DNA of 43,718 bases from Octopus bimaculoides (Eukaryota): positions 30,144,789-30,188,506 of the forward strand of contig NC_068994.1 in NCBI RefSeq assembly GCF_001194135.2, written 5' to 3'. Shown in pieces: positions 646 through 42,030 of this stretch. Position 1 is the stretch's first letter. The number at the start of each line of letters is the position of its first letter. Below the pieces are notes generated by a model. The model was given only the letters and a program-made list of their open reading frames with translations, was not told where the DNA came from and ran no database searches. Position numbers and translations under genes: made by a program.

Positions 646-2596
646 TCTATTATATAAAAGTCATTGTCTGTGTGTTCGTGTGTTATTTATAGACTCGAAA
701 ACTACTGGACCAATCCTAATGAAATTTTAAACACAGATCCAAGCCTAGCGGGAAGGGTAATGCCGTATGTTTCATACAATTTTGAAGGGGCATAAAGTGG
801 GGTAGAACTCACCATGAAAATTTATATGCTTTGGATTTTGATGACATTTGAACCATAGGTATTAAAAATATATTTATAAATATATGCAAAATTTCCATTT
901 CTTTGTATGATTCTAAGACCCCCTAATTTTAGTCATTTTTCATGGATCAAAATTACTGAATGGATCCTTATGATATTTGGAACCTTAGATTCGATCCAAA
1001 ATGGCAGGTGTAATGCAGTATGTTGGGTTTGAATTTGAGGAGGCTTAAAGGAGGAAGACCCCCACCTCCCCATGAAAATTCATAAATTTCCAATGTTGAA
1101 ATTTCAGCCATAGGTAACTGACACAAATCAAGAAGTATTCCCAAAGTTTTTGCTTCTCATGAGGATTCTAAGACCCCCCTAATGGGGGCCTTAATTCCCA
1201 AATTTTAGTCATTTTTTATGATCCAAAACTATGTCAAAAGTACTGAATGGATCTTCATGAAATTTAGAAATTATATTCTATGCATAAGGACAGATGTAAT
1301 GCAGTGTATGTTTGAAAGTGAGGGGGCAGTGTATGTTTGAAAGTTAGGGGGCAGTGTATGTTTGAAAGTGAGGGGGCAGTGTATGTTTGAAAGTTAGGGG
1401 GCATAATTGAGGCCATAAGCCCCATGAAAATTCATATATTTTTGCTGTTGATGAAATTTTAACCATAGATATTAGACACAAATGAAGCAATATTCTTAAA
1501 ATTTAAACTTCATTGGAGGTTAGTAAGACACCTTAATGGGGGCTTAACCCCAACAGTTTAGTCGTTTTTCCTAAGCCAAAACAAATACAATTGTAGTCTT
1601 GGAAGCTGTAGAGTCACCCGAGCATAAAAGATGAGCGTTATTTGTAATTCAATGGTACAACAGTGTAAGCGTTTGCTTTGAGATATACTTAGATTGTGAT
1701 TTCTGCAAGGTGCTGCATAAATTGTGAAGTAAAGGAGGGGAATCGTTATCTCCACTGATTCAGCTGTAAAGTGTTGAGTAAAATTATTTGGTTGTAGACC
1801 TCCTTTGAGCCTTTTTATTATCACTGGGTTAGAGATAGTCCCCAGATGGTACCACTGATTTCAAGGCCTTTCCAGATAAGTGATTGATCATTCAAAGAGA
1901 TTTATGGGTTGCAAATTTATTCTGTTCAGTTACCTATTGGCATAGTGATCATTGGCAAACTCAAGAGGTGACACTTTCATTTCCCCTTAGCCCTCGCGTC
2001 ACACAGTTATTAATGTTTATTTCAGTTGGGTCATGCCCTTCCAATTTCATTAAATCCAGTTACCTGTATGGTGAGGAATCCAACATTGAGGAGTGGCAAC
2101 AAGGGTAGGGTAGCTGACTGCTTATTGTGATCCTTCATATTTTGGTTTCCTCTGGCTTTGCTCTCTTTTACAAACCCAATGAACATTCATATATTTCTGA
2201 TTTCAAATAAATTTGAACAATAGATATGAGACACAATTTAAAAAAGATTCTCAAAAATTCAACTTCTCTAGTTGACTTTAAGACCCCCTAATAAGGGCCT
2301 TAATTCCTACATTTTAGTGCCTCAAGTGCTCCATTTTTAAGGAGCAAAATTCTTTAGATTTTATAAGATTTGGATTTTGAAATCTGGGCATAAAGATAAG
2401 AAGTGGGATAAATATGTCGTGATTAGAATTTTTGGTAGGGTGTGTAAAGAGGGAAAGAACACCCATTAAAATTCTTAATCTCCAATTTTGATGAAATTCA
2501 AATCATAGGTATCCCAGTTCATTACATTAAACTATAAAAGAAAAGTCTAATTCTTCAAATCCATGTGACAGGGGCAACGCCAGGTATCTCTGCTAC
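646..2596 (+). mobile_element. Non-autonomous Helitron (family H1) with internal tandem modules
   Basis: 5' A|TCTATTATATAAAAG followed by GTCTGTGTG; 3' GGGGCAACGCCAGG hairpin-like motif then CTAC|T (degenerate CTRR); GATTCTAAGACCCCCTAAT / ACTGAATGGATC modules recur internally. Confidence 0.7.
1301..1400 (+). repeat. Four exact 25-bp tandem units (2 x 50-bp higher-order)
   Basis: GCAGTGTATGTTTGAAAGT(G/T)AGGGG starts at 1301, 1326, 1351 and 1376; position 20 alternates G,T,G,T. Confidence 0.95.
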
Positions 2597-2731: not shown

Positions 2732-3865
2732 CTAGCAGAAATACCCGGCTTTGCCCTGGTTAAAGAGAATAATGAAATCTAAAAACGCCGTCTAGACTAC
2801 ACAACCCTCAACTGTTAGTAGCTACGATACCGTATTTCTACATTAATAACTCTCCAATCCATGCCAGCATGGAACATAGACATTAAGTGGAATGCCAGTC
2901 TCTCATCTAGGAGGGCCTTGAAATCAATGTTACCAACTGAGGACTATGTGTGTCGCAGTGATAATAAAAAGACCCAAAGGAGGTCTGCAATGAAATAATT
3001 TTACTCAACACTTTGCAAGTGAATCAGTGGAGGCAAAGATGCGTCTCATTTACTTGACAATTTATGCGCCACATTGCAGAAATCCCAATGTAAGTATATC
3101 TGAAAGGGAAGTCTTACACCGTTNNNNNNNNNNNNNNNNNNNNNNNNNNNNNNNNNNNNNNNNNNNNNNNNNNNNNNNNNNNNNNNNNNNNNNNNNNNNN
3201 NNNNNNNNNNNNNNNNNNNNNNNNNNNNNNNNNNNNNNNNNNNNNNNNNNNNNNNNNNNNNNNNNNNNNNNNNNNNNNNNNNNNNNNNNNNNNNNNNNNN
3301 NNNNNNNNNNNNNNNNNNNNNNNNNNNNNNNNNNNNNNNNNNNNNNNNNNNNNNNNNNNNNNNNNNNNNNNNNNNNNNNNNNNNNNNNNNNNNNNNNNNN
3401 NNNNNNNNNNNNNNNNNNNNNNNNNNNNNNNNNNNNNNNNNNNNNNNNNNNNNNNNNNNNNNNNNNNNNNNNNNNNNNNNNNNNNNNNNNNNNNNNNNNN
3501 NNNNNNNNNNNNNNNNNNNNNNNNNNCTTTCTCTCTCTCTCTGAAAGTATCTGTCATTACAGTATCAAAATGTGATTGTTTCAGTTAGTAGAATAGTTTC
3601 ATTTTTAAAGTGAAAGTATTTGACATGAGTGTTTTTGTTTCACTTTTGACACGTAATACTTAAATAGTGGAGGAGATATTATGTTGCCGTGGGCTCGAAC
3701 TCTGCAAGAAGTTAAAATGTTTTTTGACTAAAACACAACTGGAACCCTAAGTAAGGCATGTGTAAAATTTGAATGAAATTGGTTGCGTAGTTCTCGAGTT
3801 TTAGGGATTCACACAGACAGACAGACAGACAGACAGACACACATTCTCATTTTTATATATATAGA
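2732..3865 (-). mobile_element. Non-autonomous Helitron (family H2), spans a gap
   Basis: Minus strand begins A|TCTATATATATAAAA (3865) followed by (GTCT)n, and ends CCAGGGCAAAGCCGGG..TTCTGCTAG|T (2732). This matches the Helitron TC...hairpin-CTRR ends and A|T target. Confidence 0.8.
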
Positions 3866-5815: not shown

Positions 5816-6816
5816 TGAATTATATATTTATATGTGAAAGTTAATTTAATTTTAATTTTTGATAAATTGAATTTAATTGAGTTTTTACCTGTAAATTTGG
5901 ATTTTTATCCCTAATATTATTATTAAATGTATGTANNNNNNNNNNNNNNNNNNNNNNNNNNNNNNNNNNNNNNNNNNNNNNNNNNNNNNNNNNNNNNNNN
6001 NNNNNNNNNNNNNNNNNNNNNNNNNNNNNNNNNNNNNNNNNNNNNNNNNNNNNNNNNNNNNNNNNNNNNNNNNNNNNNNNNNNNNNNNNNNNNNNNNNNN
6101 NNNNNNNNNNNNNNNNNNNNNNNNNNNNNNNNNNNNNNNNNNNNNNNNNNNNNNNNNNNNNNNNNNNNNNNNNNNNNNNNNNNNNNNNNNNNNNNNNNNN
6201 NNNNNNNNNNNNNNNNNNNNNNNNNNNNNNNNNNNNNNNNNNNNNNNNNNNNNNNNNNNNNNNNNNNNNNNNNNNNNNNNNNNNNNNNNNNNNNNNNNNN
6301 NNNNNNNNNNNNNNNNNNNNNNNNNNNNNNNNNNNNNNNNNNNNNNNNNNNNNNNNNNNNNNNNNNNNNNNNNNNNNNNNNNNNNNNNNNNNNNNNNNNN
6401 NNNNNNNNNNNNNNNNNNNNNNNNNNNNNNNNNNNNNNNNNNNNNNNNNNNNNNNNNNNNNNNNNNNNNNNNNNNNNNNNNNNNNNNNNNNNNNNNNNNN
6501 NNNNNNNNNNNNNNNNNNNNNNNNNNNNNNNNNNNNNNNNNNNNNNNNNNNNNNNNNNNNNNNNNNNNNNNNNNNNNNNNNNNNNNNNNNNNNNNNNNNN
6601 NNNNNNNNNNNNNNNNNNNNNNNNNNNNNNNNNNNNNNNNNNNNNNNNNNNNNNNNNNNNNNNNNNNNNNNNNNNNNNNNNNNNNNNNNNNNNNNNNNNN
6701 NNNNNNNNNNNNNNNNNNNNNNNNNNNNNNNNNNNNNNNNNNNNNNNNNNNNNNNNNNNNNNNNNNNNNNNNNNNNNNNNNNNNNNNNNNNNNNNNNNNN
6801 NNNNNNNNNNNNNNNN

Positions 6817-6849
<33 letters not shown>

Positions 6850-6931
6850 GTATATATATATGTATATAAAGTTTTCAGAATGAGATAAAAATCCAAGGCT
6901 GTGAAAGATTTTAGAACATTTATAAATAGAA

Positions 6932-7224: not shown

Positions 7225-7570
7225 AAAGTGACCCAACTCAAACATTAACAACTGTGTGATGTGAGGGGTAAGGGGAAATGAAAGTGTCACCTCTGGAGTT
7301 TGCAAATGACTACTATACTGATAGGTAACTGGACAGAATAAATTTACAATCTATGTCTTTCAATAACCAGTCACTCATCTGGGAAGGCCTTGTAATCAAT
7401 GTAACCATCTGTGGTTAAAATGTCATCAACAGCAAAAATATATGAATTTTCATGGAGGTTATGGCCCTTATGCATAGAATATAATTTCAAAATTTCATGA
7501 AGATCCATTCAGTACTTTTGACCTAGTTTTGGATCATAAAAAATGACTAAAATTTGGGAGCTAAGGCCCC
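7225..7570 (-). mobile_element. Helitron H1 internal fragment
   Basis: Reverse complement of 1845-2040 joined to 1400-1467 and 1190-1290. Confidence 0.8.
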
Positions 7571-8919: not shown

Positions 8920-9462
8920 ATGTATTCAACACAATCTAACATGTATCCTGTTGGGCAGCAGTTTATGTGTGATATCTGCGGTCGTGCTTTTTCACTCTAT
9001 GACCAGCTGAAGTTGCACAAACGTTCCCATACCACTGATAACAAGATGTACAACTGTGAGGTGTGCAAAAAATCATTCACACAGAAAATCAACTTGAAGA
9101 ACCATGCCCGAACTCACACAGGAGAAAAACCATTTTCATGCCCAACATGTTCAAAATCCTTCAGTCAACGAGGCAACCTGAAAATACACCAACGTTCTCA
9201 CACAGGTGAAAGGCCTTTCCATTGTCACCTTTGTCCCAAAGCCTTTAGTCAGAAGGGAAACCTAAAAACACATGTTCGAACTCATGTCAACAAGCGTGTT
9301 TTCACCTGTGAAACATGTGGTAAAGTCTTTACCCATAAGTCATTGCTTCAGTGTCATGAAAAGGCTCACATGTTTGAAAGAATGTCAAATATCTCTGATG
9401 TCTACACACCAAACAACAGTGCTGTTTTTGACTTGAACAATCCAGCTAGACCCATGCACTAA
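8920..9462 (+). CDS. C2H2 zinc-finger protein, 180 aa, 5 tandem fingers, single coding exon
   Basis: Five CxxC-x12-HxxxH fingers (CDIC..HKRSH, CEVC..HARTH, CPTC..HQRSH, CHLC..HVRTH, CETC..HEKAH) with TGEKPF and TGERPF linkers; intact ORF. Confidence 0.93.
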   Translation: MYSTQSNMYPVGQQFMCDICGRAFSLYDQLKLHKRSHTTDNKMYNCEVCKKSFTQKINLKNHARTHTGEKPFSCPTCSKSFSQRGNLKIHQRSHTGERPFHCHLCPKAFSQKGNLKTHVRTHVNKRVFTCETCGKVFTHKSLLQCHEKAHMFERMSNISDVYTPNNSAVFDLNNPARPMH

Positions 9463-13548: not shown

Positions 13549-14272
13549 GACACATGTATCCCATGCTACTGATATTTATGCGCACATTCCAAAATTCCAG
13601 TGTTATGGACCCTGTAAAAAGGATTTTGCTCCTGANNNNNNNNNNNNNNNNNNNNNNNNNNNNNNNNNNNNNNNNNNNNNNNNNNNNNNNNNNNNNNNNN
13701 NNNNNNNNNNNNNNNNNNNNNNNNNNNNNNNNNNNNNNNNNNNNNNNNNNNNNNNNNNNNNNNNNNNNNNNNNNNNNNNNNNNNNNNNNNNNNNNNNNNN
13801 NNNNNNNNNNNNNNNNNNNNNNNNNNNNNNNNNNNNNNNNNNNNNNNNNNNNNNNNNNNNNNNNNNNNNNNNNNNNNNNNNNNNNNNNNNNNNNNNNNNN
13901 NNNNNNNNNNNNNNNNNNNNNNNNNNNNNNNNNNNNNNNNNNNNNNNNNNNNNNNNNNNNNNNNNNNNNNNNNNNNNNNNNNNNNNNNNNNNNNNNNNNN
14001 NNNNNNNNNNNNNNNNNNNNNNNNNNNNNNNNNNNNNNNNNNNNNNNNNNNNNNNNNNNNNNNNNNNNNNNNNNNNNNNNNNNNNNNNNNNNNNNNNNNN
14101 NNNNNNNNNNNNNNNNNNNNNNNNNNNNNNNNNNNNNNNNNNNNNNNNNNNNNNNNNNNNNNNNNNNNNNNNNNNNNNNNNNNNNNNNNNNNNNNNNNNN
14201 NNNNNNNNNNNNNNNNNNNNNNNNNNNNNNNNNNNNNNNNNNNNNNNNNNNNNNNNNNNNNNNNNNNNNNNN

Positions 14273-14655
14273 ACCACATTGCAGAAATCACAATGTAAAT
14301 ATATCTGAAAGGATAGTCTTACACTGTTGTACCGTTGAATTACAAATAATGCTCATCTGTTATGTTCGGGTGACCCTATAGCTTCCAATAGTACAACTGT
14401 ATTCATCTTTGCTTAGGAAAAATGACTAAATTGTGGGTGTGAAGTGTCCATGATGGGGTCTTTGTAACTTCTAAGAAGAAATTTTAGAAATATTACTTTA
14501 TTTGTGTGTAATATGTATGGTTAAAATTTCATCAGCATCAAAAATATATGAATTTTCATGGGGGTTATGGTCGTTATGCATAGAATATAATTTCCAAATT
14601 TCATAAAGATCCATTCAGTACTTTTGACGTAGTTTTGGATCATAAAAAATTACTA
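14273..14655 (-). mobile_element. Helitron H1 internal fragment, co-oriented with the helicase fragment across the gap
   Basis: Reverse complement of about 1215-1715 (e.g. GCAGAAATCACAAT, GATCCATTCAGTACTTTTGAC). Confidence 0.8.
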
Positions 14656-20346: not shown

Positions 20347-21042
20347 ATACACTATAACATATACATGCAGTCAATATATCTGGTACACTATAATGACGGA
20401 TGTAAACTACATCAAGTGGGAGAATCTGTAGTATGCCATTACATAGTCTGCTAATGAAAGAGATAATTTGGAATGGATATTAAATCAACAGTTCCACCTG
20501 GCAATGTTGGGGGATGGTTTGTCCAGACTTTTCTTCTCTATATTATTCTACTTATGAATTGTATAAAAAAAAATAGACACAGTTACTGGAGCATTGGATA
20601 GATTACTTCATGGTATTTTCTTCAGCTCTCTGCGTTCAGAGTTCAAATCCTGCTGAGGACAGATTTGCCTTTTATCTTTTCAGGATCCAATCCTGAAAAG
20701 AGTACCAATCCTGAAAGAGTACCAATCCAACATGAATTGGCCAAACTGTAAGAACATCAAACTGGGTACCTTGTGATATTTGTTCCAACTTCTTGCATTC
20801 TGAGTTGAAATCCCACCAACGTCTACTTGGGTGATACACTTAACACATCACCCAGTTTAACACCACCACCTGACACCTGGGGTACCTTTTGTGGAGTTCA
20901 CTCTGTGGAAGTCCAGGTCTTTCTCCTTTCCACCAGTCTCAGAAACCTTCTAAAGGGTCATGGGTACTGCCTTCCCAACTGAAACACAAGTTACTCCACA
21001 ATTTTACTGACACAGACCGTCACTAGTTTCCTCAGATCCTTT

Positions 21043-21376
21043 TTTCTTTTTACTTGTTTCAGTCATTAGACTGCAGCTATGCTGGGGCACCACCTAGAAG
21101 AATTCCAGTTGAATGAATTGACTCCAGTACTTATTCCTTTTTGCTAAGTTACAGAGAGGTAAACACATCAACACTGGCCATCAAGTGATGGTGAAGGACT
21201 AACATATACTCATACACACATATGTATGAGTTTCTTTCAGTTTCTGTCTACTGAATCCACTCACAAGGCTTTGGTTGACTTGAGGCTATAGTAGAGGAAA
21301 GTGCCATGCAATGGGACTGAGCCCAGAACTATGTGGTTGATAAGCAAACTTCTTACCACACAGCCACACCTGTGCC
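21043..21376 (-). mobile_element. SINE family A, near full length
   Basis: Head GGCACAGGTGTGGCTGTGTGGTAAG (A-box like) and GGGCTCAGTCCC (B-box like) through to the GACTGAAACAAGTAAAAAG tail. Confidence 0.9.
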
Positions 21377-21397
21377 TATTGTTTACTTTATGAAATA

Positions 21398-22459
21398 CTA
21401 GCCGAATAGCCTGTCGTTGCCAGGCAATTTTTACAATAGAATGTCTTATATAAATTATCTATTCCATGTCAGAGCAAGTCTTCCCCAACAGATAGGCCTC
21501 TTGATCAGGACAGATTTGAGCAATTTTTCACCAAGAAACATTGTTGAGAATTTTTTTCCATTTTGAATTATTTACATGTCTGTTTAACTGTTTCACATGA
21601 CTTTACTCATTAAAACTTCAGAAGTTCTTATAACTTTGGTTGTCATAATGCTTTGCTTTCGTTTGTTTAAAAATTCCTCCTCTTAATGATTTTGCTTTCA
21701 TTTCATGATAGACAGCTATCATGCAGAAAATACCAGCTTCCAAATCCTGTTTTTTGGTTAGGTAAAATTGATTAAACTTTAAACCTCAGTAACATTTATC
21801 TGCAATTTTTCTGGAACAAATAACAAAATCGGATTTAACATGGAAAATTATTTCAATATACTAAATTTGAAAATTTTGATGCAGTTTTAGAATTTCACAA
21901 TGTGACAGCAACAGGGAAGATTCTACAAAACTAGGGAGAGAGACAGTTATATGATGCGACACACACACACACACATTTACAAACATACACACAGGTAATC
22001 ACAAAATGGTGTACAAAAGATGTATGTGTGTTTTTCTTTGCGATGGACAGCAGAAAAGCCACCTATCCACTCTCCTTAAAGTGACATATTCCTCACACCA
22101 ACCCTTCTGTGTGTTGTATCTATATATTTATGAAAGTGTGTATGCAGCGTTGTATATGACAGCTGTATTAATGTTACCAACCCATTGCCGCTGTTGTTCT
22201 TGCCTTCACTGATATAAGTCACCCTCTCTCTGCAACTACCTTTCCCTTAGACCAATACTTTTTGCAACCTTCTCATTTTATCATATAATTTTCCCAACAC
22301 CCCTGGTGGGCACATTATAGACTTTTATTGAAATCCAATTGGGTTATTATTGAACTGGATGTTAGTGTAACATATATGCAAAGTTTTGTGAATATTGGTT
22401 TGCTGGTTTAGGTACTAAGATGGTAACAGACAGACAGAAATTGCCATTTGAATATTAAA
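21398..22459 (-). mobile_element. Non-autonomous Helitron (family H3) with boundaries fixed by the paralogous empty site
   Basis: 3' GCCTG-GCAACGA-CAGGC hairpin then GGCTAG|T; 5' A|TTTAATATTC (TC decayed) followed by CTGTCTGTCTGT; the flanks rejoin to CAGCAAAATAA|TATTTCAT, as seen at 22619-22637; no TSD. Confidence 0.85.
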
Positions 22460-22649
22460 TTATTTTGCTGTTTTACTAGGATAGAATGAATTATGCCTAA
22501 AAAATCAGATCACTCTCATTCATCATCATCAACATTTAACAGGGACAAGACATTAAATGATGATGATGAAAGTGATCTGTGTTTTTTTTTGGTATAATTC
22601 ATTCTATCCTTGTAAAACAGCAAAATAATATTTCATAAAATAAACAATA

Positions 22650-22794
22650 GGCACAGGTGTGGCTGTGTGGTAAGAAGTTTTCTTATCAACCACATAGTTC
22701 TGTGCTCAGTCTCACTGCATGGCACTTTCCTCTACTATAGCCTCGGGCCAACCAGAGCCTTGTAAGTAGATTCGGTAGACAGAAACTGAAAGAA
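22650..22794 (+). mobile_element. SINE family A 5' part (duplicate of the 21043-21376 copy)
   Basis: Carries the same GGCACTTTCCTCTACTATAG deletion variant as the 21.3 kb copy. Confidence 0.9.
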
Positions 22795-23324
22795 GCATGA
22801 TAGTAAAAGAAGGTAGAGCACAGTTGAGAAAAACATTTAACCCCATTTCATTTAATGGTGGTAACCTCATGGATGGAAGGGTAATGAAGAGTTAGTGGGT
22901 TAGGATGAGAGCATCTTGTTCTGTTGTGGCTCGAAATACAGAGACCTTCATAAACAGCATCAATACTGGTGGGTATCAGTGTTACAAGCTAAGAGTGATA
23001 CAGTTAGGAAATACTATTACTACTGGGTTCTCCATTCAACAACTGATGAAAAGAGGTCCCACACCATAAGAGAGAATGTATGAAAATCTGTGGCAAAGTA
23101 GAAGGGATTCTTCCGTCTTGTTGAAGACCTTTTAGTACAACACAGATGAGTGTTTTTCTTTCTAGCAGTGTTTACTATATGATAAACTGCAATGAATGAA
23201 GAATAGTTGTGAAACCCATCAATGAAAAACAGATATAAAATTATGTTGATATAAACTGATCATCATAATAATTTCAATTATGGGTTGGACAATTTGGTAG
23301 GAACCAATTGGCTGAAGGACCATA

Positions 23325-23430
23325 TCTTGCTCCAGTGTCTCAGTTTTGGCATGGTTTGTATGGTTAGATGCCCTTCCTAAAACCAAAAGCTTTATTGAGT
23401 GTACAGAGTACTTTTTGCATGGCACCAGTA
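23325..23430 (-). mobile_element. RTE 3' UTR fragment
   Basis: TTTTGGCATGGTTT..GATGCCCTTCCTAA..CTTTTTGCATGGCACCAG. Confidence 0.65.
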
Positions 23431-24136
23431 CTAAATGAGGAGTAGAGATGAGTAAAGGGTTAGAACAGAACAGGTTTGTTGTAGAAGAGGAGCTGCAAGA
23501 CAACTCACATTTGAGGAGAGAGAGTGAGAGTGATTGAGTGGAGCTGGAAAGTGATAAAAAACATAGTGGTGATAAGACATCAAGATAGACCTTCAAGGTA
23601 CAAGGTGGGTAGGAATGAGTGGGGCAAAGGGACAGGGAGTGAATGGGGAGTAGGAGATGCAGAGCAGATCAGTAGAAAAGAAATGATGATACTGTAAAAT
23701 AGGACAAATGATGATACTGAAATAGGACAAAATGAAGATACCGTAAATAGGACAAAAGAGAGATGACATGCTGTTGGGTAGGTTGTAAGAATGAATGGGG
23801 AGGAGAGGGGCAGGTGTAGAGTATGAAGAGGGGGAGATGTATGGTGGTGGAGGATAAATTTGGTGGACCAGTGTGTGATGGGATGGGGTGATCAATGAAA
23901 GTATGGGCGGAGAGAACAGTATTAATGGATAAAGGATGGATAACAAGTGCAGTGGTTCTGGATACTAAGAAATCTGGCATAAAAAATGTAGATACAGGGA
24001 GGTGATTGGTGTTTTGAGAAAGGAAAATAAGTGAAGGGCCCAGTTGTATTTATATATACATACACATACAGCTCCACCTGAATTCAGATTCACTGAGGTA
24101 AGCAGATATTCTCGAGAGCTGTACACATATACACAT

Positions 24137-24257
24137 GCTTCCCAACCCCAACCATGTGGCCTTGAGTTTAGCCCCACTGCAAAGTGCCTTGAGGAGTGTT
24201 TTCTACTATAGTCTTGAGCTGACAAAAGCCTTTGTCAGTGAATTTGGTAGGCAGAAA
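24137..24257 (+). mobile_element. SINE family A fragment
   Basis: GCTTCCCAACC..CCCACTGC..TTCTACTATAG..AAAGCC..TTTGGTAGGCAGAAA. Confidence 0.7.
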
Positions 24258-24419
24258 ATAAGTCTGTTTTCTGTATCCATGTGTGTGTGAAAGTGCTTGC
24301 GCCTCCTAGACACTCACACATATTTGACAGTGGAAAGGAGAAGATATGAACAAGCAGGTATACAAGATATAACAAAGAAACAAATATACAAACTAAATAT
24401 GAATTGTAATTTTTAAAAT

Positions 24420-24425
24420 TTTATT
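24420..24425 (-). terminator. Candidate polyadenylation signal of the 705-aa ZNF gene
   Basis: AATAAA on the minus strand about 45 nt after the stop codon; the hexamer is common in AT-rich DNA. Confidence 0.3.
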
Positions 24426-24468
24426 TTCATTGTAATTTTTGAAATGATAAAGGAAAAATGAAGTTATG

Positions 24469-26586
24469 TCAAAGGTCATGTGCTGAATTTGAAGTAATTA
24501 CTGGAGTTGTAGTGAAAATCTGTGCTGCTGCACTAGGGTGCATTTGTATGGTTGGAATCACTTGTGCATTTGTTGGGTACATCTGAATTGTGGGAAAAAC
24601 CTGAGTTGATGGAAAGATCTGGGCTGCCATTGTATAGAGATCAGAATCAGGTAACGTCATATGTTGAGCAAGTTGTGCATGTGGAAGTGTTGCTTGTGTA
24701 TCCAGATTGAGATTTATCTGCTGTGGTTGAGCTGAGGTTGACTGGTTCAGGGGGACACCTGTTGCTATGGTGACAGTCTGAGGATGTTGTATTTGTTGTT
24801 GGGCAGCTTGGATGTTAAATAAGTGAAGATTTTCTGCTTTCACAATATTAATAGTTTGTAGTGGAGCTGCACTCTCTTGAGTAGATGGTTGTGAAGCTGC
24901 ACTCTCTAGAGTAGTTGGTTGTGAAGCTGCACTCTCTTGAGCAGTTGGTTGTGAAGCTGCACTTTCTTGAATCTGTTGTGCAGCTGAGTCTATTTCTACT
25001 TCTTGTTTTAGCTGCACTTGGAGAAGATTTTCAGTGTTTTCTTGCTGTTGTTGTTGTTGTTGTAATGGAACACAGCTTAATTTGCGTTCTCCTTTGTTTG
25101 CTTTTTTATGCCTTTCCAAGTGATCGTTGCGGGCAAATGCATAACCACACCTTTCACATTTGTAAGGTCGCTCACCAGAATGGATTTTACTGTGTACTTT
25201 CAAATGTGACCTCTGAGAAAAAGACTTTTGGCAAAGGTCACACTGAAATAACTTTTCCCCAAGATGTGTTCGTTTGTGTCGTTTTAATTTACTATTAGCT
25301 GAAAATGCCTTGCTGCATGTACTGCAGACAAATGGAAGCACTGCATTGTGAATTTGCTTGTGTAAATTGGTGTGTGAACGCTGAGAGAAAGCTTTCCAGC
25401 AGACATCACAATCAAGAGGATTCATTTCACTCATCAGTTCCTTCATTTTATCATTCTGAAAAATATTGTCCCTGTCAAGTATGCTTGAAGATGATGATGA
25501 TGATGATGCACTCTCAGTCAAATGCTTCTCACTAGTGTGTATGCGTTGGTTGTGCACTTTTAAATGTGAGCGTTGGCTGAAAGACTTACCACACGTTTTG
25601 CAATCAAATGGCTTTAGAGCCTTGTGTATCCGCTCATGCACACTTGCATCTTTATGCAGAGTGAAAGCTTTCCAGCAGTCTTTACAATCAAATGGATTTG
25701 ATCCATTGAGCTCGTATGCTGCCATCCAGTGGTTAGTACTGGCATCAGAGCAGCTGCTGTTCTTTCTGTCTGTTAAGGAAACAGTTCTGGAGCTGTCTTC
25801 TCGGTTGGGAGTCTTTAATGTGTTATGGATTTTTAAGTGTCGGGCAAGATTACTACTTCTAGAGAATGTGTGTCCACATATGTTGCACCTATAAGGTTGT
25901 CCACCTGTATGAATTGTTTCATGTTCCTTCAGGTGGAACTTCTGTGAAAACTCCTTTCCACAGACTTTACACGTAAACTTTGTAGAACTGCTATCAGGGA
26001 TCTTATTATCCTCATCTCTTGTCATAACAACAGATGCTGGAGAATCACTGGAAGTTACACTCTGAGATTGCTGCAGTACTGTTGTCAGAAGTACTTGTTG
26101 ATGTTGTCGTTGTTGCTGTAGTTGTAATTGGTGTTGTTGTTGTTGTTTTTGTTGTAGTAGCTCCTCCTCCTCTTCTTCGGATTGCTTTTGTTGTTGAAGT
26201 TGAATTTGAAGCTCTTGTTGTTGTTGTTGTTCCAACAACTGCTGCTGCTGTTGCTGTTCCAACAACTGCTGCTGCTGCTGCTGTTGCAGTTGCTGCTGTT
26301 GTTGCTGTTGCAGTTGCTGTTCTTCTTGGGTTGGTTGGTGCTGCAGCAATAGAATATGTTGTGGTTGTTGCTCTTGTTGTTGTTGTTGTTGCTGCTGCTG
26401 CTGCTGTTGCAGCAGAAACGTTGGCTGCACAGGGTGGTGGGTGCTGCTGTGTTTCTCCAATAGCTCATACTGGCTGAATGTCTGTGCACACAAACTGCAA
26501 CAGTATGCTGCCCCCAGCTTTGTCAGTGCATCGGCAACCAACACAATGGGAAGACCCTCATTCGATACTTGGATAACTTGATTCAT
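24469..26586 (-). CDS. C2H2 zinc-finger protein, 705 aa, 10 fingers (last degenerate), with polyQ and polyS tracts
   Basis: One N-terminal finger (CSLC..HSSTH), a polyQ region, then fingers arranged 2+2+4 plus a terminal CERC..HKKAN finger lacking the second His; TGGQPY, LGEKLF and SGERPY linkers; uninterrupted ORF with an in-frame stop upstream at 26656-26658. Confidence 0.93.
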   Translation of the reverse strand: MNQVIQVSNEGLPIVLVADALTKLGAAYCCSLCAQTFSQYELLEKHSSTHHPVQPTFLLQQQQQQQQQQQQEQQPQHILLLQHQPTQEEQQLQQQQQQQLQQQQQQQLLEQQQQQQLLEQQQQQELQIQLQQQKQSEEEEEELLQQKQQQQHQLQLQQQRQHQQVLLTTVLQQSQSVTSSDSPASVVMTRDEDNKIPDSSSTKFTCKVCGKEFSQKFHLKEHETIHTGGQPYRCNICGHTFSRSSNLARHLKIHNTLKTPNREDSSRTVSLTDRKNSSCSDASTNHWMAAYELNGSNPFDCKDCWKAFTLHKDASVHERIHKALKPFDCKTCGKSFSQRSHLKVHNQRIHTSEKHLTESASSSSSSSSILDRDNIFQNDKMKELMSEMNPLDCDVCWKAFSQRSHTNLHKQIHNAVLPFVCSTCSKAFSANSKLKRHKRTHLGEKLFQCDLCQKSFSQRSHLKVHSKIHSGERPYKCERCGYAFARNDHLERHKKANKGERKLSCVPLQQQQQQQENTENLLQVQLKQEVEIDSAAQQIQESAASQPTAQESAASQPTTLESAASQPSTQESAAPLQTINIVKAENLHLFNIQAAQQQIQHPQTVTIATGVPLNQSTSAQPQQINLNLDTQATLPHAQLAQHMTLPDSDLYTMAAQIFPSTQVFPTIQMYPTNAQVIPTIQMHPSAAAQIFTTTPVITSNSAHDL
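24864..24969 (-). repeat. Coding 30-bp minisatellite (QESAASQPT-type, about 3.5 units)
   Basis: AAGCTGCACTCTCT.GAG.AG.TGGTTGTG with period 30 on the + strand. Confidence 0.9.
26090..26410 (-). repeat. CAA/CAG-rich coding microsatellite (polyQ)
   Basis: (TGT)n/(TGC)n runs on + encode the multiple Q runs of the 705-aa protein. Confidence 0.9.
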
Positions 26587-27023: not shown

Positions 27024-27579
27024 TTGTTTAGATATAGCTTGTATTTGTTCATGTTAATGATGTTCAATATTGTTAACATTATGTACTGGTTATAGTGGGA
27101 ATGGTTATTGTCGGTATTGCTTATGTGGTAGTTGCATCACATTTACTGTTATGTATTCTCTCTGTTGTTGTTGTTGCTCTTCAAGTTTCATGTTACTAAT
27201 GGCAACTATTGTTGTTGTTGTTGGTGTATTGGATGAAGCTTCAGATAGACAAGGCAGTTTGGACCATTATTTATTGATTGTTTAAAAGACAGAGAAATAA
27301 AGACGGTGGGGGTGGCGATGATTGAAACACTGTCATAGGTGACCAGATGGATCCATAGACTTGTTCTTCCTTTCATTTCAGACCTGAAAACCATAAAAAA
27401 AGACAACTGAAATATTACAACATTACCATTACATATTTCCATTAGACATTTTGACAACAAGAACATAGATAAAACATGTTGGTGTGTGTGTGTGTGTGTG
27501 TGTACAGGCATGCATATGTGTGTGTCCTACATATGCCAGTATAGAAAATGAAGATTAAATGACGATGATGATGATGATG

Positions 27580-27612
<33 letters not shown>

Positions 27613-27670
27613 AACACGTATATATACATACACATATACACACATATAAAAACATATATGTAAGCATATA

Positions 27671-27817
27671 TCATCATCATCGTTTAACGTCCGCTTTCCA
27701 TGCTAGCATGGGTTGGACGATTTGACTGAGGACTGGTGAAACCGAATGGCAACACCAGGCTCCAATCTAAATTTGGCAGAGTTTCTACAGCTGGATGCCC
27801 TTCCTAACGCCAACCAC
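27671..27817 (-). mobile_element. Young RTE 3' end with (CAT)n tail
   Basis: CATCATCATCGTTTAACGTCCGCTTTCCATGCTAGCATGGGTTGGACG..CTGGATGCCCTTCCTAACGCCAACCAC; CpGs are retained. Confidence 0.85.
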
Positions 27818-28263: not shown

Positions 28264-28490
28264 TTTGTGTTTTATCTACCTTCCTACTTATTAGGATTTT
28301 GGTTTTAGCTAGGTTGACTCTAAGGCCCTTCAATTCTAGACCTTGCTTCCACACCTGAAACTTCTCCTCTAGTTCTGATAGTGACTCCGCAATTAGGGCA
28401 AGGTCATCAGCATAGAGGAGCTCCCAGGGGCAACCTGTCTTGAACTCCTCTGTGATTGCCTGGAGGACTATGGTAAATAAGAGGGGGCTG
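28257..28490 (-). pseudogene. RTE LINE reverse transcriptase fragment
   Basis: SPLLFTIVLQAITEEFKTGCPWELLYADDLALIAES..GLRVNLAKTK; YADD at 28403-28414. Confidence 0.9.
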
Positions 28491-28967
28491 NNNNNNNNNN
28501 NNNNNNNNNNNNNNNNNNNNNNNNNNNNNNNNNNNNNNNNNNNNNNNNNNNNNNNNNNNNNNNNNNNNNNNNNNNNNNNNNNNNNNNNNNNNNNNNNNNN
28601 NNNNNNNNNNNNNNNNNNNNNNNNNNNNNNNNNNNNNNNNNNNNNNNNNNNNNNNNNNNNNNNNNNNNNNNNNNNNNNNNNNNNNNNNNNNNNNNNNNNN
28701 NNNNNNNNNNNNNNNNNNNNNNNNNNNNNNNNNNNNNNNNNNNNNNNNNNNNNNNNNNNNNNNNNNNNNNNNNNNNNNNNNNNNNNNNNNNNNNNNNNNN
28801 NNNNNNNNNNNNNNNNNNNNNNNNNNNNNNNNNNNNNNNNNNNNNNNNNNNNNNNNNNNNNNNNNNNNNNNNNNNNNNNNNNNNNNNNNNNNNNNNNNNN
28901 NNNNNNNNNNNNNNNNNNNNNNNNNNNNNNNNNNNNNNNNNNNNNNNNNNNNNNNNNNNNNNNNNTA

Positions 28968-29703
28968 TCGATCTTCTGGCCGCCTCTTTAATCTTCGCCG
29001 ATTTGCTGCCAATTCAAAGGTACTCCAGTCTATTATTCATGACCTCCTTTATGCAGATGACTGTGACTTAGTCACTCATACAGTGGATGACATGCAAATA
29101 CTCATGAATTGCATTTCTGCTTCTTGCAAGGCATTTGGACTCAGCATTAGTCTGGACAAGACTGTTGTAATGTTCCAGCCTGCACCAGGAAATCCATATA
29201 TGGTACCAGCCATCTTGGTTGAAGGAACAATTCTGAAGGTAGTAGACAAGTTTGTCTACCTGGGCAGCAAACTCAGCCGTTCTTGCTCCCTGGATGAGGA
29301 AATATCTTTCAGGTTGCAGAGAGCAACTAATTCCTTCCGGTCTCTTCAGTCTCGTGTCTGGTCCCAGCATGGCATAGCAAGGCAANNNNNNNNNNATCTT
29401 TCAGGTTGCAGAGAGCAACTAATTCCTTCCGGTCTCTTCAGTCTCGTGTCTGGTCCCAGCATGGCATAGCAAGGCAAACAAAAGTTGCTGTGTACTGACA
29501 TCGCTCCTCTACTCATGTGAGACATGGACTCTGTACAAACGTCAGGTAAGAGTCCTTGAACACTTTCATCAGAAATATCTCAGACACATTCTCAATGTTG
29601 GCTGGACCTCAAAAATTCCAGACACACAGGTCCTGAGCTCAGCTGATATCTTGAGTGTTGAGGCAATGGTGCACAAGCTCCGGTTACATTGGACTGGACA
29701 CCT
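28968..29703 (+). pseudogene. RTE (BovB-like) LINE reverse transcriptase fragment
   Basis: RLFNLRRF..DLLYADDCDLV (YADD 29050-29061), FGLSISLDKT, FVYLGS, SCETWTLY, LRLHWTGH; includes an 80-nt duplication around the 10-N gap. Confidence 0.9.
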
Positions 29704-29759: not shown

Positions 29760-29828
<69 letters not shown>

Positions 29829-30760
29829 NNNNNNNNNNNNNNNNNNNNNNNNNNNNNNNNNNNNNNNNNNNNNNNNNNNNNNNNNNNNNNNNNNNNNNNN
29901 NNNNNNNNNNNNNNNNNNNNNNNNNNNNNNNNNNNNNNNNNNNNNNNNNNNNNNNNNNNNNNNNNNNNNNNNNNNNNNNNNNNNNNNNNNNNNNNNNNNN
30001 NNNNNNNNNNNNNNNNNNNNNNNNNNNNNNNNNNNNNNNNNNNNNNNNNNNNNNNNNNNNNNNNNNNNNNNNNNNNNNNNNNNNNNNNNNNNNNNNNNNN
30101 NNNNNNNNNNNNNNNNNNNNNNNNNNNNNNNNNNNNNNNNNNNNNNNNNNNNNNNNNNNNNNNNNNNNNNNNNNNNNNNNNNNNNNNNNNNNNNNNNNNN
30201 NNNNNNNNNNNNNNNNNNNNNNNNNNNNNNNNNNNNNNNNNNNNNNNNNNNNNNNNNNNNNNNNNNNNNNNNNNNNNNNNNNNNNNNNNNNNNNNNNNNN
30301 NNNNNNNNNNNNNNNNNNNNNNNNNNNNNNNNNNNNNNNNNNNNNNNNNNNNNNNNNNNNNNNNNNNNNNNNNNNNNNNNNNNNNNNNNNNNNNNNNNNN
30401 NNNNNNNNNNNNNNNNNNNNNNNNNNNNNNNNNNNNNNNNNNNNNNNNNNNNNNNNNNNNNNNNNNNNNNNNNNNNNNNNNNNNNNNNNNNNNNNNNNNN
30501 NNNNNNNNNNNNNNNNNNNNNNNNNNNNNNNNNNNNNNNNNNNNNNNNNNNNNNNNNNNNNNNNNNNNNNNNNNNNNNNNNNNNNNNNNNNNNNNNNNNN
30601 NNNNNNNNNNNNNNNNNNNNNNNNNNNNNNNNNNNNNNNNNNNNNNNNNNNNNNNNNNNNNNNNNNNNNNNNNNNNNNNNNNNNNNNNNNNNNNNNNNNN
30701 NNNNNNNNNNNNNNNNNNNNNNNNNNNNNNNNNNNNNNNNAGACACAGACTCAATAACTT

Positions 30761-40789: not shown

Positions 40790-40962
40790 CTGGGCGAAAT
40801 GCTTAGCTGCATTTCGTCCGTCTTTACGTTCTGAGTTCAAATTCCGCTTTACCTTTCATCCTTTCGAGGTCGATAAAATAATACCAGTTGAATACTGGGG
40901 TCGATTTAATTGACTTAGCTCCTTTCCCAAATCTGCTGGCCTAATGCCAAAATTTGGAACCA
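40790..40962 (+). mobile_element. SINE family B at the truncated 3' end of the hAT transposase
   Basis: GGGCGAAATGCTTAGC..ACGTTCTGAGTTCAAATTCCGC..CCTTTCATCCTTTCGAGGTCGATAAAATAATACCAG. Confidence 0.9.
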
Positions 40963-40967
40963 ATATT

Positions 40968-42030
40968 TTCAGGAAATATTTCAGGTAAATGGAAGCCTCT
41001 GCACCTAGGAAGTAATCAAGCTGCGAATTTTTAACTTTCCTTATCCACAATTCTAATTTGTCGGTGAAAAACTTTAATTTGCCTGTAATTGTAATAATAT
41101 TTTCGTTCACTCCTTGCAGACTCAAAATTAAAACGTTTAACTTCTCAAAAAGATCGTTGAGAAATGCTACTTCCAGCCACCAATTATCATTGTTATGAAA
41201 TTCAAATCCAGAATTTTCACCATCGAAGAAACATATTTCATTTCGCAAAGAAATAAATCGAGAGAGCACTTTTCCTTTCGAAAGCCATTGCACTTCTTTA
41301 TGAAGCAGCAAACACTTAAAATCAGAATCCATAGTTTCACACAGCAAATCAAAATGTCTGCACCGTAGGGAATGCGATTTTATGTAATTCACCACTTTAA
41401 CAACGCTGTCCATCGTCTTCAGGAGACCATCAGGTAGAGATTTTGACACCAAAACTTCGCGGTGAACCATGCAATGTACAATTTTAACTTGTGAATTGTT
41501 TTGTAATACATGAGCGACGAAGCCTTTTTTTCGATCCTGCATGGAAGGAGCGCCATCAATGCAAACGCAAACAAATTTGCCACTGCATCCTTCTCAATAC
41601 GACATTTTGGTTTACAGGTTAAAGACATCTTCTGTCGTTCTTTCCTTCAATTCACAACAAAAGAAAAACTGACTTATGATTTTACCACCTCTGATGATTC
41701 GCAGAAATGACATTAGTTGAGCTTTGTTGCTGATGTCTGTACTTTCATCGATTTGTAAGGCCCACAAGTTTTCGAGTTCATTTTTTGCTTCAGTGAAATG
41801 TTCGCGGAGCTGATCATCAACGTCTTGTGAAATGTCTTGAATTTTACGAGAAATCGTGTGGGNNNNNNNNNNNNNNNNNNNNNNNNNNNNNNNNNNATCA
41901 TTGTGCTAACGGCGATCTCCAAGGCTGTAGAATAATGTTTTCAGCGTCAGAATGTGACTGTTTACTTCTTTGCCAAAAGCTGGGCAGTTTCGTAACTCGC
42001 GATTTGAGCTTTCTCGGGAATTGAGTGAAA
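40968..42030 (-). pseudogene. hAT (Buster/Charlie-type) transposase pseudogene
   Basis: LQIDESTDISNKAQL (catalytic D), CIDGAPSM, HCMVHREVL (CxxH motif), LLLHKEVQWLSKGKVLSRF, AFLNDLFEKLN; frameshifts and stops upstream of 41542; the C-terminus is lost. Confidence 0.92.

What the first reader, a model, noticed from the sequence alone, without database searches (positions are those of the whole stretch)
21232..22794. Fold-back palindrome whose two arms are the filled and empty alleles of one Helitron insertion
Seen in sequence: around a 13-nt spacer (22540-22552), 22460-22539 mirrors 22553-22629. Removing 21398-22459 extends the symmetry to 21232 and 22794 (about 12 mismatches in about 165 nt of the outer arm, counted by eye). 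The arms share unique flank (TATTTCATAAA.TAAACAATA) and a private SINE deletion, so these are not two independent SINE insertions. The right arm reads CAGCAAAATAA|TATTTCAT, and the left arm has a 1062-bp hairpin-CTAG element exactly at that A|T with no TSD. The apex lies in an RTE-type (CAT)n/(ATG)n tail. Established: Helitrons insert at A|T without a TSD, and fold-back synthesis at breaks creates inverted duplications. Inference: the order was SINE insertion, fold-back duplication, then a Helitron insertion that broke and possibly stabilised the palindrome. It lies about 1.7 kb downstream of the 705-aa ZNF stop, so read-through RNA could form a long duplex for ADAR or small-RNA processing.
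Basis: partly seen in the sequence, partly recalled or inferred. Interest (0 to 1): 0.75.

Follow-up and report, generated by a model that had tools for sequence, protein, structure and literature searches.

The report
Old inverted duplication with nested transposon
About 245 bp of octopus DNA downstream of a zinc-finger gene was copied back-to-front roughly ten million years ago, and one copy later received a 1-kb mobile-element insertion; it is a tidy genomic fossil, not a new kind of system.

Summary
In Octopus bimaculoides chromosome CM046614.1, removing 21398-22459 leaves two arms of about 245 nt that mirror each other around a 13-nt loop (223 matches, 16 mismatches, 10 gap columns).

The arms come from a single ancestral sequence. 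They share about 100 nt of non-SINE flank, a 10-nt SINE deletion and 12 derived substitutions, against 6 private changes in each arm. Rough dates are about 36 My for the SINE and about 10-12 My for the duplication.

The 1062-bp insert sits exactly at an A|T with no target-site duplication. On the minus strand it ends in a hairpin, 7 nt, then CTAG. Such an end is expected at about 5e-4 of positions by chance. However, its 5' end is TT rather than TC, and no second copy could be found, so I call it Helitron-like, not proven.

One new finding: the loop plus the first 18 nt of the right arm form a roughly 31-nt 5'-truncated copy of an (ATG)n-tailed retroelement family. The mirror axis therefore sits at that copy's truncation point, which suggests reverse-transcriptase snap-back as the cause of the fold-back. 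The direction of copying is unresolved.

This is an ordinary kind of event, in an unusually legible example.

The parts
21039..21377 (-). Full-length octopus SINE. Its head (GGCACAGG...) is at 21377 and its tail (...CAAGTAAAAAGAAAAAAG) is near 21039. Only its 5' domain, 21232-21377, lies inside the left arm.
   Evidence: Alignment with 10 other SINE copies from the window and L002. The 3' domain matches other copies. ARAGORN finds no tRNA.
21232..21397 (.). Left outer arm: the SINE 5' domain plus 20 nt of flank (21378-21397). It ends at the A of the A|T insertion site.
21398..22459 (-). 1062-bp insertion with no target-site duplication, Helitron-like. On the minus strand it reads 5'-TTTAATATTC... 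...GCCTG-GCAACGA-CAGGC-TATTCGG-CTAG-3'. CTAG is at 21398-21401 and the hairpin at 21409-21425. It is non-coding (GC 34%, longest open frame 85 aa) and contains a (CA)8 run at 21960-21975.
   Evidence: Exact filled/empty comparison with the right arm. Hairpin -6 kcal/mol, with 9 of 200 shuffles as good. The combination of hairpin, CTRR and a following T occurs at 43 of 79,456 strand-positions. No terminal inverted repeats and no target-site duplication. No other copy found.
22460..22539 (.). Left inner arm. It is unique flank up to about 22515, followed by the mirrored copy of the retroelement end (TCATTCATCATCATCAACATTTAA, about 22516-22539).
22540..22552 (+). 13-nt loop, CAGGGACAAGACA. Read on the + strand it continues the retroelement 3' fragment of the right arm.
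   Evidence: The nhmmer match runs 5 nt into the loop. The BLAST match 22545-22569 is 96% identical over 25 nt. In an anchored alignment to family copies, P=0.001-0.01 on the + strand and 0.9 on the - strand.
22540..22570 (+). About 31 nt, 5'-truncated 3' end of an (ATG)n-tailed non-LTR retroelement family. The family consensus ends ...CATGGAAAACAGACATTAAATGATGATGATGA.
   Evidence: 13 other copies in the window and L002 were aligned. Profile hit of 15.9 bits.
22553..22628 (.). Right inner arm. It ends at the A of the empty A|T site (22628|22629).
22629..22794 (+). Right outer arm: 21 nt of flank (22629-22649) plus the SINE 5' domain (22650-22794). The SINE lacks its central and 3' domains, and homology to the left arm stops at about 22794.
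   Evidence: The flanks outside the arms are not homologous (score 31 against a null of 28.3 +/- 3.8). The missing SINE part is not found anywhere in 22795-24470.
24469..26586 (-). Context: a 705-aa polyQ-rich C2H2 zinc-finger ORF. Its stop lies 1675 nt from the right end of the palindrome.

Best explanation
This is a real, old inverted duplication in non-coding DNA of Octopus bimaculoides, with a later transposon insertion in one arm.

Proposed sequence of events:
1. A SINE inserted roughly 36 My ago. This is shown by its divergence from the family consensus.
2. Next to it, a non-LTR retroelement with an (ATG)n tail began target-primed reverse transcription but stopped after about 31 nt. The fragment itself is shown; that it results from an abortive event is inferred.
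3. The 3' end of that short cDNA folded back on itself, leaving a 13-nt loop. A polymerase then copied the cDNA and at least 215 nt of adjoining host DNA, including the SINE head, to give two mirror arms of about 245 nt roughly 10-12 My ago. That a fold-back duplication happened is strongly supported. That it was a reverse-transcriptase snap-back is inferred from the position of the mirror axis.
4. Later, a 1062-bp non-coding element inserted into the left arm exactly between an A and a T, with no target-site duplication. It most likely moved by a rolling-circle (Helitron-like) mechanism. The insertion is shown; the mechanism is inferred from its 3' end only.

The locus is most likely a neutral fossil. 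It would form about 225 bp of double-stranded RNA only if transcription reads through from the ZNF gene or arises locally.

Sub-confidences:
- Duplication of one ancestral sequence: 0.9.
- Insertion came after the duplication: 0.8.
- The insert is a Helitron: 0.55.
- Snap-back during retrotransposition was the trigger: 0.4.
For: Symmetry and duplication:
- A single origin is supported because about 100 nt of non-SINE flank is shared only by the arms. The 10-nt deletion is absent from 10 other copies.
- There are 12 shared derived substitutions, 4 of them unique among the 12 copies, against 6 private to the left arm and 6 to the right.
- An assembly artefact is unlikely. The arms differ by 7% and by a 1-kb indel, and the stretch lies in gap-free sequence.

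Dates: JC 0.087 before the duplication and about 0.04 per arm after it, using JC 0.09 = 25 My from PMC13282606.

Insertion:
- Both flanks match the empty site exactly, at A|T, with no target-site duplication and no terminal inverted repeats.
- The 3' end is CTAG preceded by a hairpin, a configuration found at 5.4e-4 of strand-positions.
- Helitrons are present in Octopus, and some are recently active. The defining features of canonical Helitrons are taken from PMC11417382.

Retroelement at the apex:
- A family of 13 copies shares the same 3' end, and many are truncated to 30-45 nt.
- A perfect 21-nt profile match at 22548-22568 reaches into the loop. The loop's homology to the family is significant only on the + strand.
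- With about 13 such ends in 65 kb, an arbitrary apex would fall within 5 nt of a truncation point about 0.2% of the time (my arithmetic).
- Snap-back synthesis from the cDNA 3' end, copying the cDNA and sometimes nearby target DNA, is a documented class of 5' junction in R2-mediated insertions (PMC11371274).
Against: Helitron identity:
- The 5' end is TT, not the defining TC.
- The hairpin has only a 5-bp perfect stem.
- No second copy of the element or its termini was found in the window, the O. sinensis locus or the metagenome scan. This is a very small sample of a 2.7-Gb genome.

Snap-back origin:
- The loop is continuous with the right arm, which makes the left arm the copy. Yet the left SINE is full-length and the right one is truncated at 22794. 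So either a later deletion removed the rest of the right SINE and any further mirrored DNA (no trace remains), or the loop has been inverted since.
- The loop homology rests on 13 nt (P about 0.001-0.01).
- The one other head-to-head pair of this family that I found (L002 13607/13841) has no mirrored flanks.

No reads could be examined, so the assembly, transcription and editing are all unverified.
Confidence: 0.55

Rival explanations
1. A generic fold-back at a double-strand break or stalled fork, unrelated to retrotransposition. The left arm, with its full SINE, is the original. A resected 3' end folded back at a short inverted microhomology (TTAA ... 13 nt ... TTAA) and was extended by a host polymerase. 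The new strand then joined the downstream DNA at 22794|22795.
For: The left SINE is complete and the right one stops at the outer junction, so no extra event is needed. The palindromic TTAA sits on both sides of the loop. Fold-back inverted duplications at breaks are established (my own knowledge).
Against: This model leaves two things to coincidence. First, the mirror axis lies at the 5' truncation point of a retroelement fragment. Second, the loop matches that family's sequence only when read continuously with the right arm (P about 0.001-0.01).
Confidence: 0.35
2. The 1062 bp is not a Helitron. It could be another kind of insertion without a target-site duplication, such as DNA captured at a repaired break or an endonuclease-independent retroelement insertion. 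Or it could be ancestral sequence that was deleted from, or skipped in, the right arm.
For: The 5' end lacks TC. No other family copies were found. PMC11417382 warns that Helitron terminal signals are widespread and give many false positives. A deletion would need only 1 nt of microhomology.
Against: A 3' end with a hairpin, CTAG, a following T and a preceding A is expected at about 1e-3 or less of arbitrary indel boundaries. There is no poly(A) or microsatellite tail at either end and no coding remnant.
Confidence: 0.35
3. Two independent insertions of a common composite repeat (SINE plus flank) that happen to face each other, or a mobile foldback or MITE-type element.
For: SINEs are very dense here, with at least 8 in the window. 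Inverted SINE pairs are common in metazoan genomes.
Against: None of the 10 other SINE copies carries the flank, the deletion or 4 of the shared substitutions. The flank has no other copy in the window or L002. The left SINE runs on past the arm boundary to its natural 3' end, so the arms are not the termini of a mobile unit.
Confidence: 0.03
4. An assembly artefact: a mis-join or a chimeric fold-back read at about 22546.
For: The assembly is a draft with several runs of N in the window. No reads could be laid on it.
Against: An artefactual palindrome would have near-identical arms. These differ at 16 sites, 10 gap columns and a 1062-bp insertion, and the private changes are symmetric at 6 and 6. 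The nearest gaps are at about 14.3 kb and 28.4 kb.
Confidence: 0.04
5. The hairpin is a functional RNA locus, either an ADAR substrate in the ZNF 3' UTR or a hairpin-RNA or miRNA precursor.
For: The predicted RNA fold pairs 158 bp of outer arms and about 70 bp of inner arms on either strand. The inner hairpin folds at -84 kcal/mol. Nearby inverted repeats are the main ADAR substrates in metazoans, including octopus (PMC9989829).
Against: There is no evidence of transcription. Three AATAAA/ATTAAA signals lie between the stop codon and the palindrome. The Rfam hits are far below threshold (34 bits against a cut-off of 80). The arms have drifted at roughly the repeat clock rate used here, with no sign of compensatory change.
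Confidence: 0.1

Closest known systems
Snap-back 5' junctions of target-primed reverse transcription (R2 protein / PRINT insertions, PMC11371274)
   Same: A retroelement 3' end with its tail is joined to the target. At the cDNA's 3' end the sequence turns back and continues as the complement of the cDNA and then of the adjoining target DNA. The retroelement copy is 5'-truncated at the turn.
   Different: Here the copied host flank is long (at least 215 nt, probably more than 450). The element is an uncharacterised (ATG)n-tailed octopus family, not R2. The event is a fossil about 10 My old. The inferred direction of copying conflicts with which SINE is complete.
Fold-back (hairpin-primed) inverted duplications and palindromes formed at double-strand breaks (own knowledge)
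   Same: There are two arms derived from one sequence, a short unique loop, and short palindromic microhomology (TTAA) at the base of the loop.
   Different: It is small (245-nt arms), interstitial and not associated with amplification. The apex coincides with the end of a retroelement.
Canonical Helitron (HLE1) non-autonomous insertion (features as listed in PMC11417382)
   Same: It inserted between A and T, has no target-site duplication and no terminal inverted repeats, ends 3' in CTAG with a hairpin 7 nt upstream, and is non-coding. Its boundaries are validated by a paralogous empty site.
   Different: The 5' end is TT, not TC. The hairpin is short. Family membership, meaning other copies that share the termini, was not demonstrated.
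L1 twin-priming inversions (own knowledge)
   Same: Inverted retroelement sequence arises at the 5' side of a truncated non-LTR insertion.
   Different: Twin priming inverts a different, upstream part of the same RNA and does not duplicate host flank. Here the same 18 nt plus the host flank are present in both orientations.
Inverted SINE or Alu pairs as ADAR substrates (PMC9989829)
   Same: Two SINE segments lie in opposite orientation within 1.6 kb downstream of a gene, with strong predicted double-stranded RNA.
   Different: The pair arose by duplication rather than by two insertions. Transcription and editing are untested.

Membership tests
Canonical Helitron (HLE1) | Inserts between host A and T without a target-site duplication | tested here: met
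   The filled site is CAGCAAAATAA[1062 bp]TATTTCAT and the empty site is CAGCAAAATAA|TATTTCAT. Both flanks match exactly, with a 1-nt boundary ambiguity.
Canonical Helitron (HLE1) | 3' end is CTRR | tested here: met
   The minus strand ends ...TATTCGGCTAG.
Canonical Helitron (HLE1) | Short hairpin just upstream of CTRR | tested here: met
   GCCTG-GCAACGA-CAGGC lies 7 nt from CTAG. It is weak: -6 kcal/mol, z=-1.9, with 9 of 200 shuffles as good. The joint signal of hairpin, CTRR and T occurs at 5.4e-4 of positions.
Canonical Helitron (HLE1) | 5' end begins with TC | tested here: not met
   The 5' end is TTTAATATTCAAATGG. The first TC is at bases 9-10 and is preceded by T, not A. This could be a 5'-truncated or non-canonical copy.
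Canonical Helitron (HLE1) | Other genomic copies share both termini, or an autonomous RepHel partner exists | tested here: inconclusive
   No other copy was found in the window, in L002 or in the metagenome scan. Only about 65 kb of octopus DNA was reachable.
Helitron-like element 2 (Helentron) | Short terminal inverted repeats and insertion between T and T | tested here: not met
   There are no terminal inverted repeats (best score 8 over 13 nt, and that match is internal). The flanking bases are A and T.
Fold-back inverted duplication | Both arms descend from one sequence (shared non-repeat flank and shared derived changes) | tested here: met
Fold-back inverted duplication | Short unique loop at the axis | tested here: met
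   The 13-nt loop is at 22540-22552.
Fold-back inverted duplication | The structure exists in the organism's DNA (reads span the apex) | not testable with these tools
Support is indirect, from the divergence between the arms.
TPRT snap-back junction | Retroelement 3' end with its tail abuts the target flank | tested here: met
   22548-22570 matches the family's 3' end perfectly, and the tail is followed by unique flank.
TPRT snap-back junction | The turn-back point is the 3' end of the cDNA, i.e. the 5' truncation point of the element | tested here: met
   Family homology starts at about 22540, the first base of the loop. It is significant on the + strand only (P=0.001-0.01).
TPRT snap-back junction | The arm on the far side of the loop is the newly made copy | tested here: inconclusive
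   The model predicts that the left arm is the copy. But the left SINE is complete and the right one is truncated, with no displaced remainder. An extra deletion or an inversion of the loop would be needed.
   Only the shared 3' module of about 130 nt and the (ATG)n tail were seen. No coding part was available.
ADAR or small-RNA hairpin substrate | Long, near-perfect intramolecular duplex | tested here: met
   (in silico only).
ADAR or small-RNA hairpin substrate | Transcribed, with A-to-G clusters or small RNAs | not testable with these tools
Three poly(A) signals lie upstream of the palindrome.

The most novel reading that the evidence does not exclude
The palindrome is a natural fossil of reverse-transcriptase snap-back. 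An abortive 31-nt insertion of an (ATG)n-tailed non-LTR element turned back on its own cDNA and copied several hundred nucleotides of host flank. That turned a failed retrotransposition into a long hairpin-forming locus next to a gene. If this is common, it would be a retroelement-driven source of inverted duplications, and so of double-stranded RNA or hairpin-RNA precursors, in repeat-rich cephalopod genomes.
Probability: 0.35. Interest if true: 0.55.

Novelty: new member of a known kind. Interest (0 to 1): 0.3.

Why it matters
The locus carries its own control. One arm preserves the empty site of the insertion in the other arm, so the insertion boundaries are known to the base without needing a second genome. 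That makes it a clean test case for annotating Helitron-like elements in Octopus, where curated libraries are recent.

The position of the mirror axis, at the truncation point of a tiny retroelement copy, connects two things. One is a junction class seen so far mainly in engineered R2 insertions. The other is a natural inverted duplication of host DNA. If that connection holds genome-wide, it would name a concrete source for some of the inverted repeats that feed ADAR editing.

Taken alone, the locus is a neutral fossil, and nothing suggests a function.

Tried and rejected
There was therefore no test of the assembly, of transcription or of editing.

Orthologous locus.
- The full ZNF query returned Argonauta as the best hit, at 62% identity. 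The finger-free C-terminal tail found nothing.
- The O. sinensis locus L002 matches the coding sequence at only 66-76% nucleotide identity, so it is a paralogue or fast-evolving. It has no match to the inner flank or the insert.
- The Argonauta locus L003 retains nothing of the inner flank.
- O. vulgaris protein P0008 and the window's 228-aa ORF are not on record.

More octopus DNA. Two metagenome scans, one for the Helitron 3' end and one for a SINE pattern bracketing the deletion, returned nothing. The third homologue search was not spent, because an ortholog would already have topped the first search.

Readings I rejected.
- A target-site duplication: TAATATT / TAGTATT would need a substitution plus a 5-nt indel.
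- Terminal inverted repeats for the insert.
- Coding remnants in the insert.
- A tRNA or Rfam identity for the arms or the hairpin.
- Continuation of the symmetry beyond 21232 / 22794.
- A displaced remainder of the right SINE.
- A second snap-back example at L002 13607/13841, which proved to be two independent short copies in a (TA)n tract.
Full report
**Where the window comes from.** The 705-aa zinc-finger ORF at 24469-26586 (minus strand) is on record in exactly one place. That place is Octopus bimaculoides assembly GCA_001194135.2, chromosome CM046614.1, at about 30.16 Mb. The right end of the palindrome lies 1675 nt beyond the stop of this gene.

**The observation.**
- The repeat finder reports arms 21232-21400 / 22626-22794 (169 nt, 92%) and 22459-22504 / 22584-22629 (46 nt, 93%).
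- With 21398-22459 removed, the left arm aligns to the reverse complement of the right arm with 218 matches, 17 mismatches and 4 gap columns.
- A global alignment gives 223 / 16 / 10 and a JC distance of 0.070.
- The loop is 22540-22552.
- The inner, uninterrupted hairpin folds at -84.3 kcal/mol, against -28.1 +/- 3.6 for shuffles.

**One sequence or two insertions?** I aligned the 5' domains of 12 SINE copies, 7 from the window and 5 from an O. sinensis locus, together with their upstream flanks.
- The SINE starts at GGCGCAGGAGTGG. This places the head at 21377 (minus strand) in the left arm and at 22650 (plus strand) in the right arm.
- The roughly 100 nt between each head and the loop is therefore upstream flank, not SINE.
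- That flank is shared only by the two arms. It has no other copy in the window or in the O. sinensis locus, apart from its last 20 nt or so.
- Both arms lack the same 10 nt (GGGCAAGTGT), which all ten other copies have.
- Over 146 SINE columns, the arms share 12 differences from the consensus. Four of those are seen in no other copy. Each arm has 6 private differences.

This is what one SINE insertion, later duplicated, would leave.

**Rough dates.** I used the calibration quoted in PMC13282606, where JC 0.09 is about 25 My and JC 0.2 is about 56 My. On that scale the SINE is about 36 My old and the duplication about 10-12 My old. The same paper puts the O. bimaculoides / O. vulgaris split at 13-33 My. 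The palindrome is therefore probably specific to the O. bimaculoides lineage.

**Where the symmetry ends.** The left SINE runs on to its natural 3' end near 21039. The right SINE stops at about 22794. The flanks outside the arms are not homologous (score 31 against 28.3 +/- 3.8 for shuffles). The missing part of the right SINE is nowhere between 22795 and the ZNF gene. Since the left SINE continues past the arm boundary, the arms are not the ends of a mobile foldback element.

A chimeric fold-back would give near-identical arms. These differ at 16 sites, 10 gap columns and a 1-kb insertion, with symmetric private changes. The stretch is also several kb from the nearest run of N. I put the artefact reading at about 4%.

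**The 1062-bp insert.**
- The right arm reads CAGCAAAATAA|TATTTCAT. The left arm has exactly that sequence, interrupted by 21398-22459.
- There is no target-site duplication and there are no terminal inverted repeats.
- On the minus strand the insert ends GCCTG-GCAACGA-CAGGC-TATTCGG-CTAG and is followed by T.
- The hairpin is weak: -6 kcal/mol, and 9 of 200 shuffles fold as well.
- A hairpin of at least 5 bp within 12 nt of a CTRR that is followed by T occurs at only 43 of 79,456 strand-positions in this window. An arbitrary indel boundary would look like this about once in a thousand.
- These are the features of a canonical Helitron (HLE1) 3' end and target, as listed in PMC11417382. That paper also warns that such signals alone give many false positives.
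- The defining 5' TC is absent: the element starts TTTAATATTC.
- The insert is non-coding.
- I found no second copy of it, or of either terminus, in the window, the O. sinensis locus or a metagenome scan.
- Helitrons do exist in Octopus and some are recently active.

I therefore call it Helitron-like, possibly 5'-truncated, at about 0.55. I do not file it as a member of the family.

**What the apex is made of.** Relaxed searches showed that the apex-proximal 20 nt or so of both arms match the ends of a repeat family. That family has 6 other copies in the window and 7 in the O. sinensis locus.
- The family ends ...CCATGCCAGCATGGAAAACAGACATTAAATGATGATGATGA, with a variable (ATG)n tail.
- Many of its copies are truncated to 30-45 nt.
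- BLAST matches 22545-22569 at 96%.
- A profile of the family's last 45 nt matches 22548-22568 perfectly on the plus strand, reaching 5 nt into the loop. The minus-strand match stops at the edge of the mirror.
- Anchored at the junction, the whole 13-nt loop resembles the family sequence on the plus strand (P = 0.001-0.01 against random 13-mers from the window). Its reverse complement does not (P = 0.9).

So the loop plus the first 18 nt of the right arm form one copy of about 31 nt, 5'-truncated. Its tail points away from the apex. The mirror axis sits at its truncation point. But the apex is at the element's head rather than in its tail, and the rest of the inner arms is ordinary flank. The RTE label was not tested.

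**How the duplication probably happened.** The position of the axis is hard to ascribe to chance. By my arithmetic, there are about 13 such ends in 65 kb, which gives about 0.2% for a hit within 5 nt.

It is what snap-back synthesis would leave. A nick on the minus strand, right of the tail, primes a short cDNA. The cDNA's 3' end folds back with a 13-nt loop. A polymerase then copies the cDNA and runs on into the adjoining host strand. [quoted passage not shown]

The difficulty is direction. This model makes the left arm the copy, yet the left SINE is the complete one. One further event is needed: either a deletion that removed the rest of the right SINE, or an inversion of the loop in a mirror-image version of the model.

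The generic alternative is a host-polymerase fold-back at a break, using the TTAA ... TTAA microhomology, with the left arm as the original. It needs no extra event, but it leaves the retroelement coincidences unexplained.

I rate snap-back at about 0.4 and the generic fold-back at about 0.35. An orthologous pre-duplication allele would decide between them. One other head-to-head pair of this family (L002 13607/13841) turned out to be two independent copies without mirrored flanks. I therefore have no second example.

**RNA potential.** Folded as RNA on either strand, 21215-22810 pairs 158 bp of outer arms across the insert and 67-71 bp of inner arms. Nearby inverted repeats are the main ADAR substrates across metazoans, including octopus (PMC9989829). 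By the same token, a configuration like this is ordinary.
- Three canonical poly(A) signals on the minus strand (at 24425, 23396 and 22856) lie between the ZNF stop and the palindrome.
- The Rfam matches are generic long-hairpin hits far below threshold.
- The arms have drifted at roughly the repeat clock rate used here.

No function is indicated, and none could be tested.

**Verdict.** 'Helitron' is plausible but fails one defining feature and lacks family evidence. The description of the apex needed correcting, and the correction points to a retrotransposition-linked origin. The locus is a well-preserved instance of known kinds of events, so I score its interest at 0.3.

Noticed in passing
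window 3064-3520, 5936-6868, about 13640-14270, about 28450-28960, 29776-30712: There are runs of N (assembly gaps). The '933-nt 100% inverted repeats' and the 8-nt-period 'direct repeat' family reported are artefacts of these runs, not real repeats.
   Followed up: partly
window 29304-29385 and 29396-29477: An 82-nt direct repeat, 100% identical and 92 nt apart, sits between two gaps. It may be a gap-edge assembly duplication.
   Followed up: no
window 27523-27574(+), 27670-27817(-); L002 13607(-), 13841(+), 18614(+): Copies of the (ATG)n-tailed retroelement family often abut (TA)n or (TG)n tracts, including the central microsatellite of the octopus SINE. This suggests a microsatellite target preference.
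   Followed up: partly
window 24469-26586 (-): The 705-aa polyQ-rich C2H2 ZNF has its best homologue in Argonauta hians (62% identity over 77% of the query). No O. sinensis or O. vulgaris ortholog appeared in the protein collection. The nearest O. sinensis locus is only 66-76% identical in coding DNA.
   Followed up: partly
window 24147-24289 (+): A SINE fragment lies about 180 nt downstream of the ZNF stop, in the presumptive 3' UTR.
   Followed up: no
window 8920-9462 (+): A second, 180-aa C2H2 zinc-finger ORF has four or five fingers (Pfam zf-C2H2 2.7e-29). The window appears to lie in a ZNF cluster.
   Followed up: partly
window 40856-41542 (-): A 228-aa ORF has no Pfam match and no record in the gene-position index. 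Its nature is unknown.
   Followed up: partly
window 1659-1886 and 2896-3123: This is another inverted pair (228 nt, 82% complementary, 1009 nt apart). It is probably two copies of a repeat rather than a duplication.
   Followed up: no
window 7407-7549 and 14513-14655: A 143-nt direct repeat is 92% identical and 7.1 kb apart.
   Followed up: no
window 22795-22808: Just past the right arm, GCATGATAGTAAAAGAAGG resembles the SINE's own 3' terminus (ACTGAAACAAGTAAAAGA). This could hint at an internal SINE deletion between two ACTGAAA(G/C)AAG motifs, but the match is too short to be significant.
   Followed up: partly
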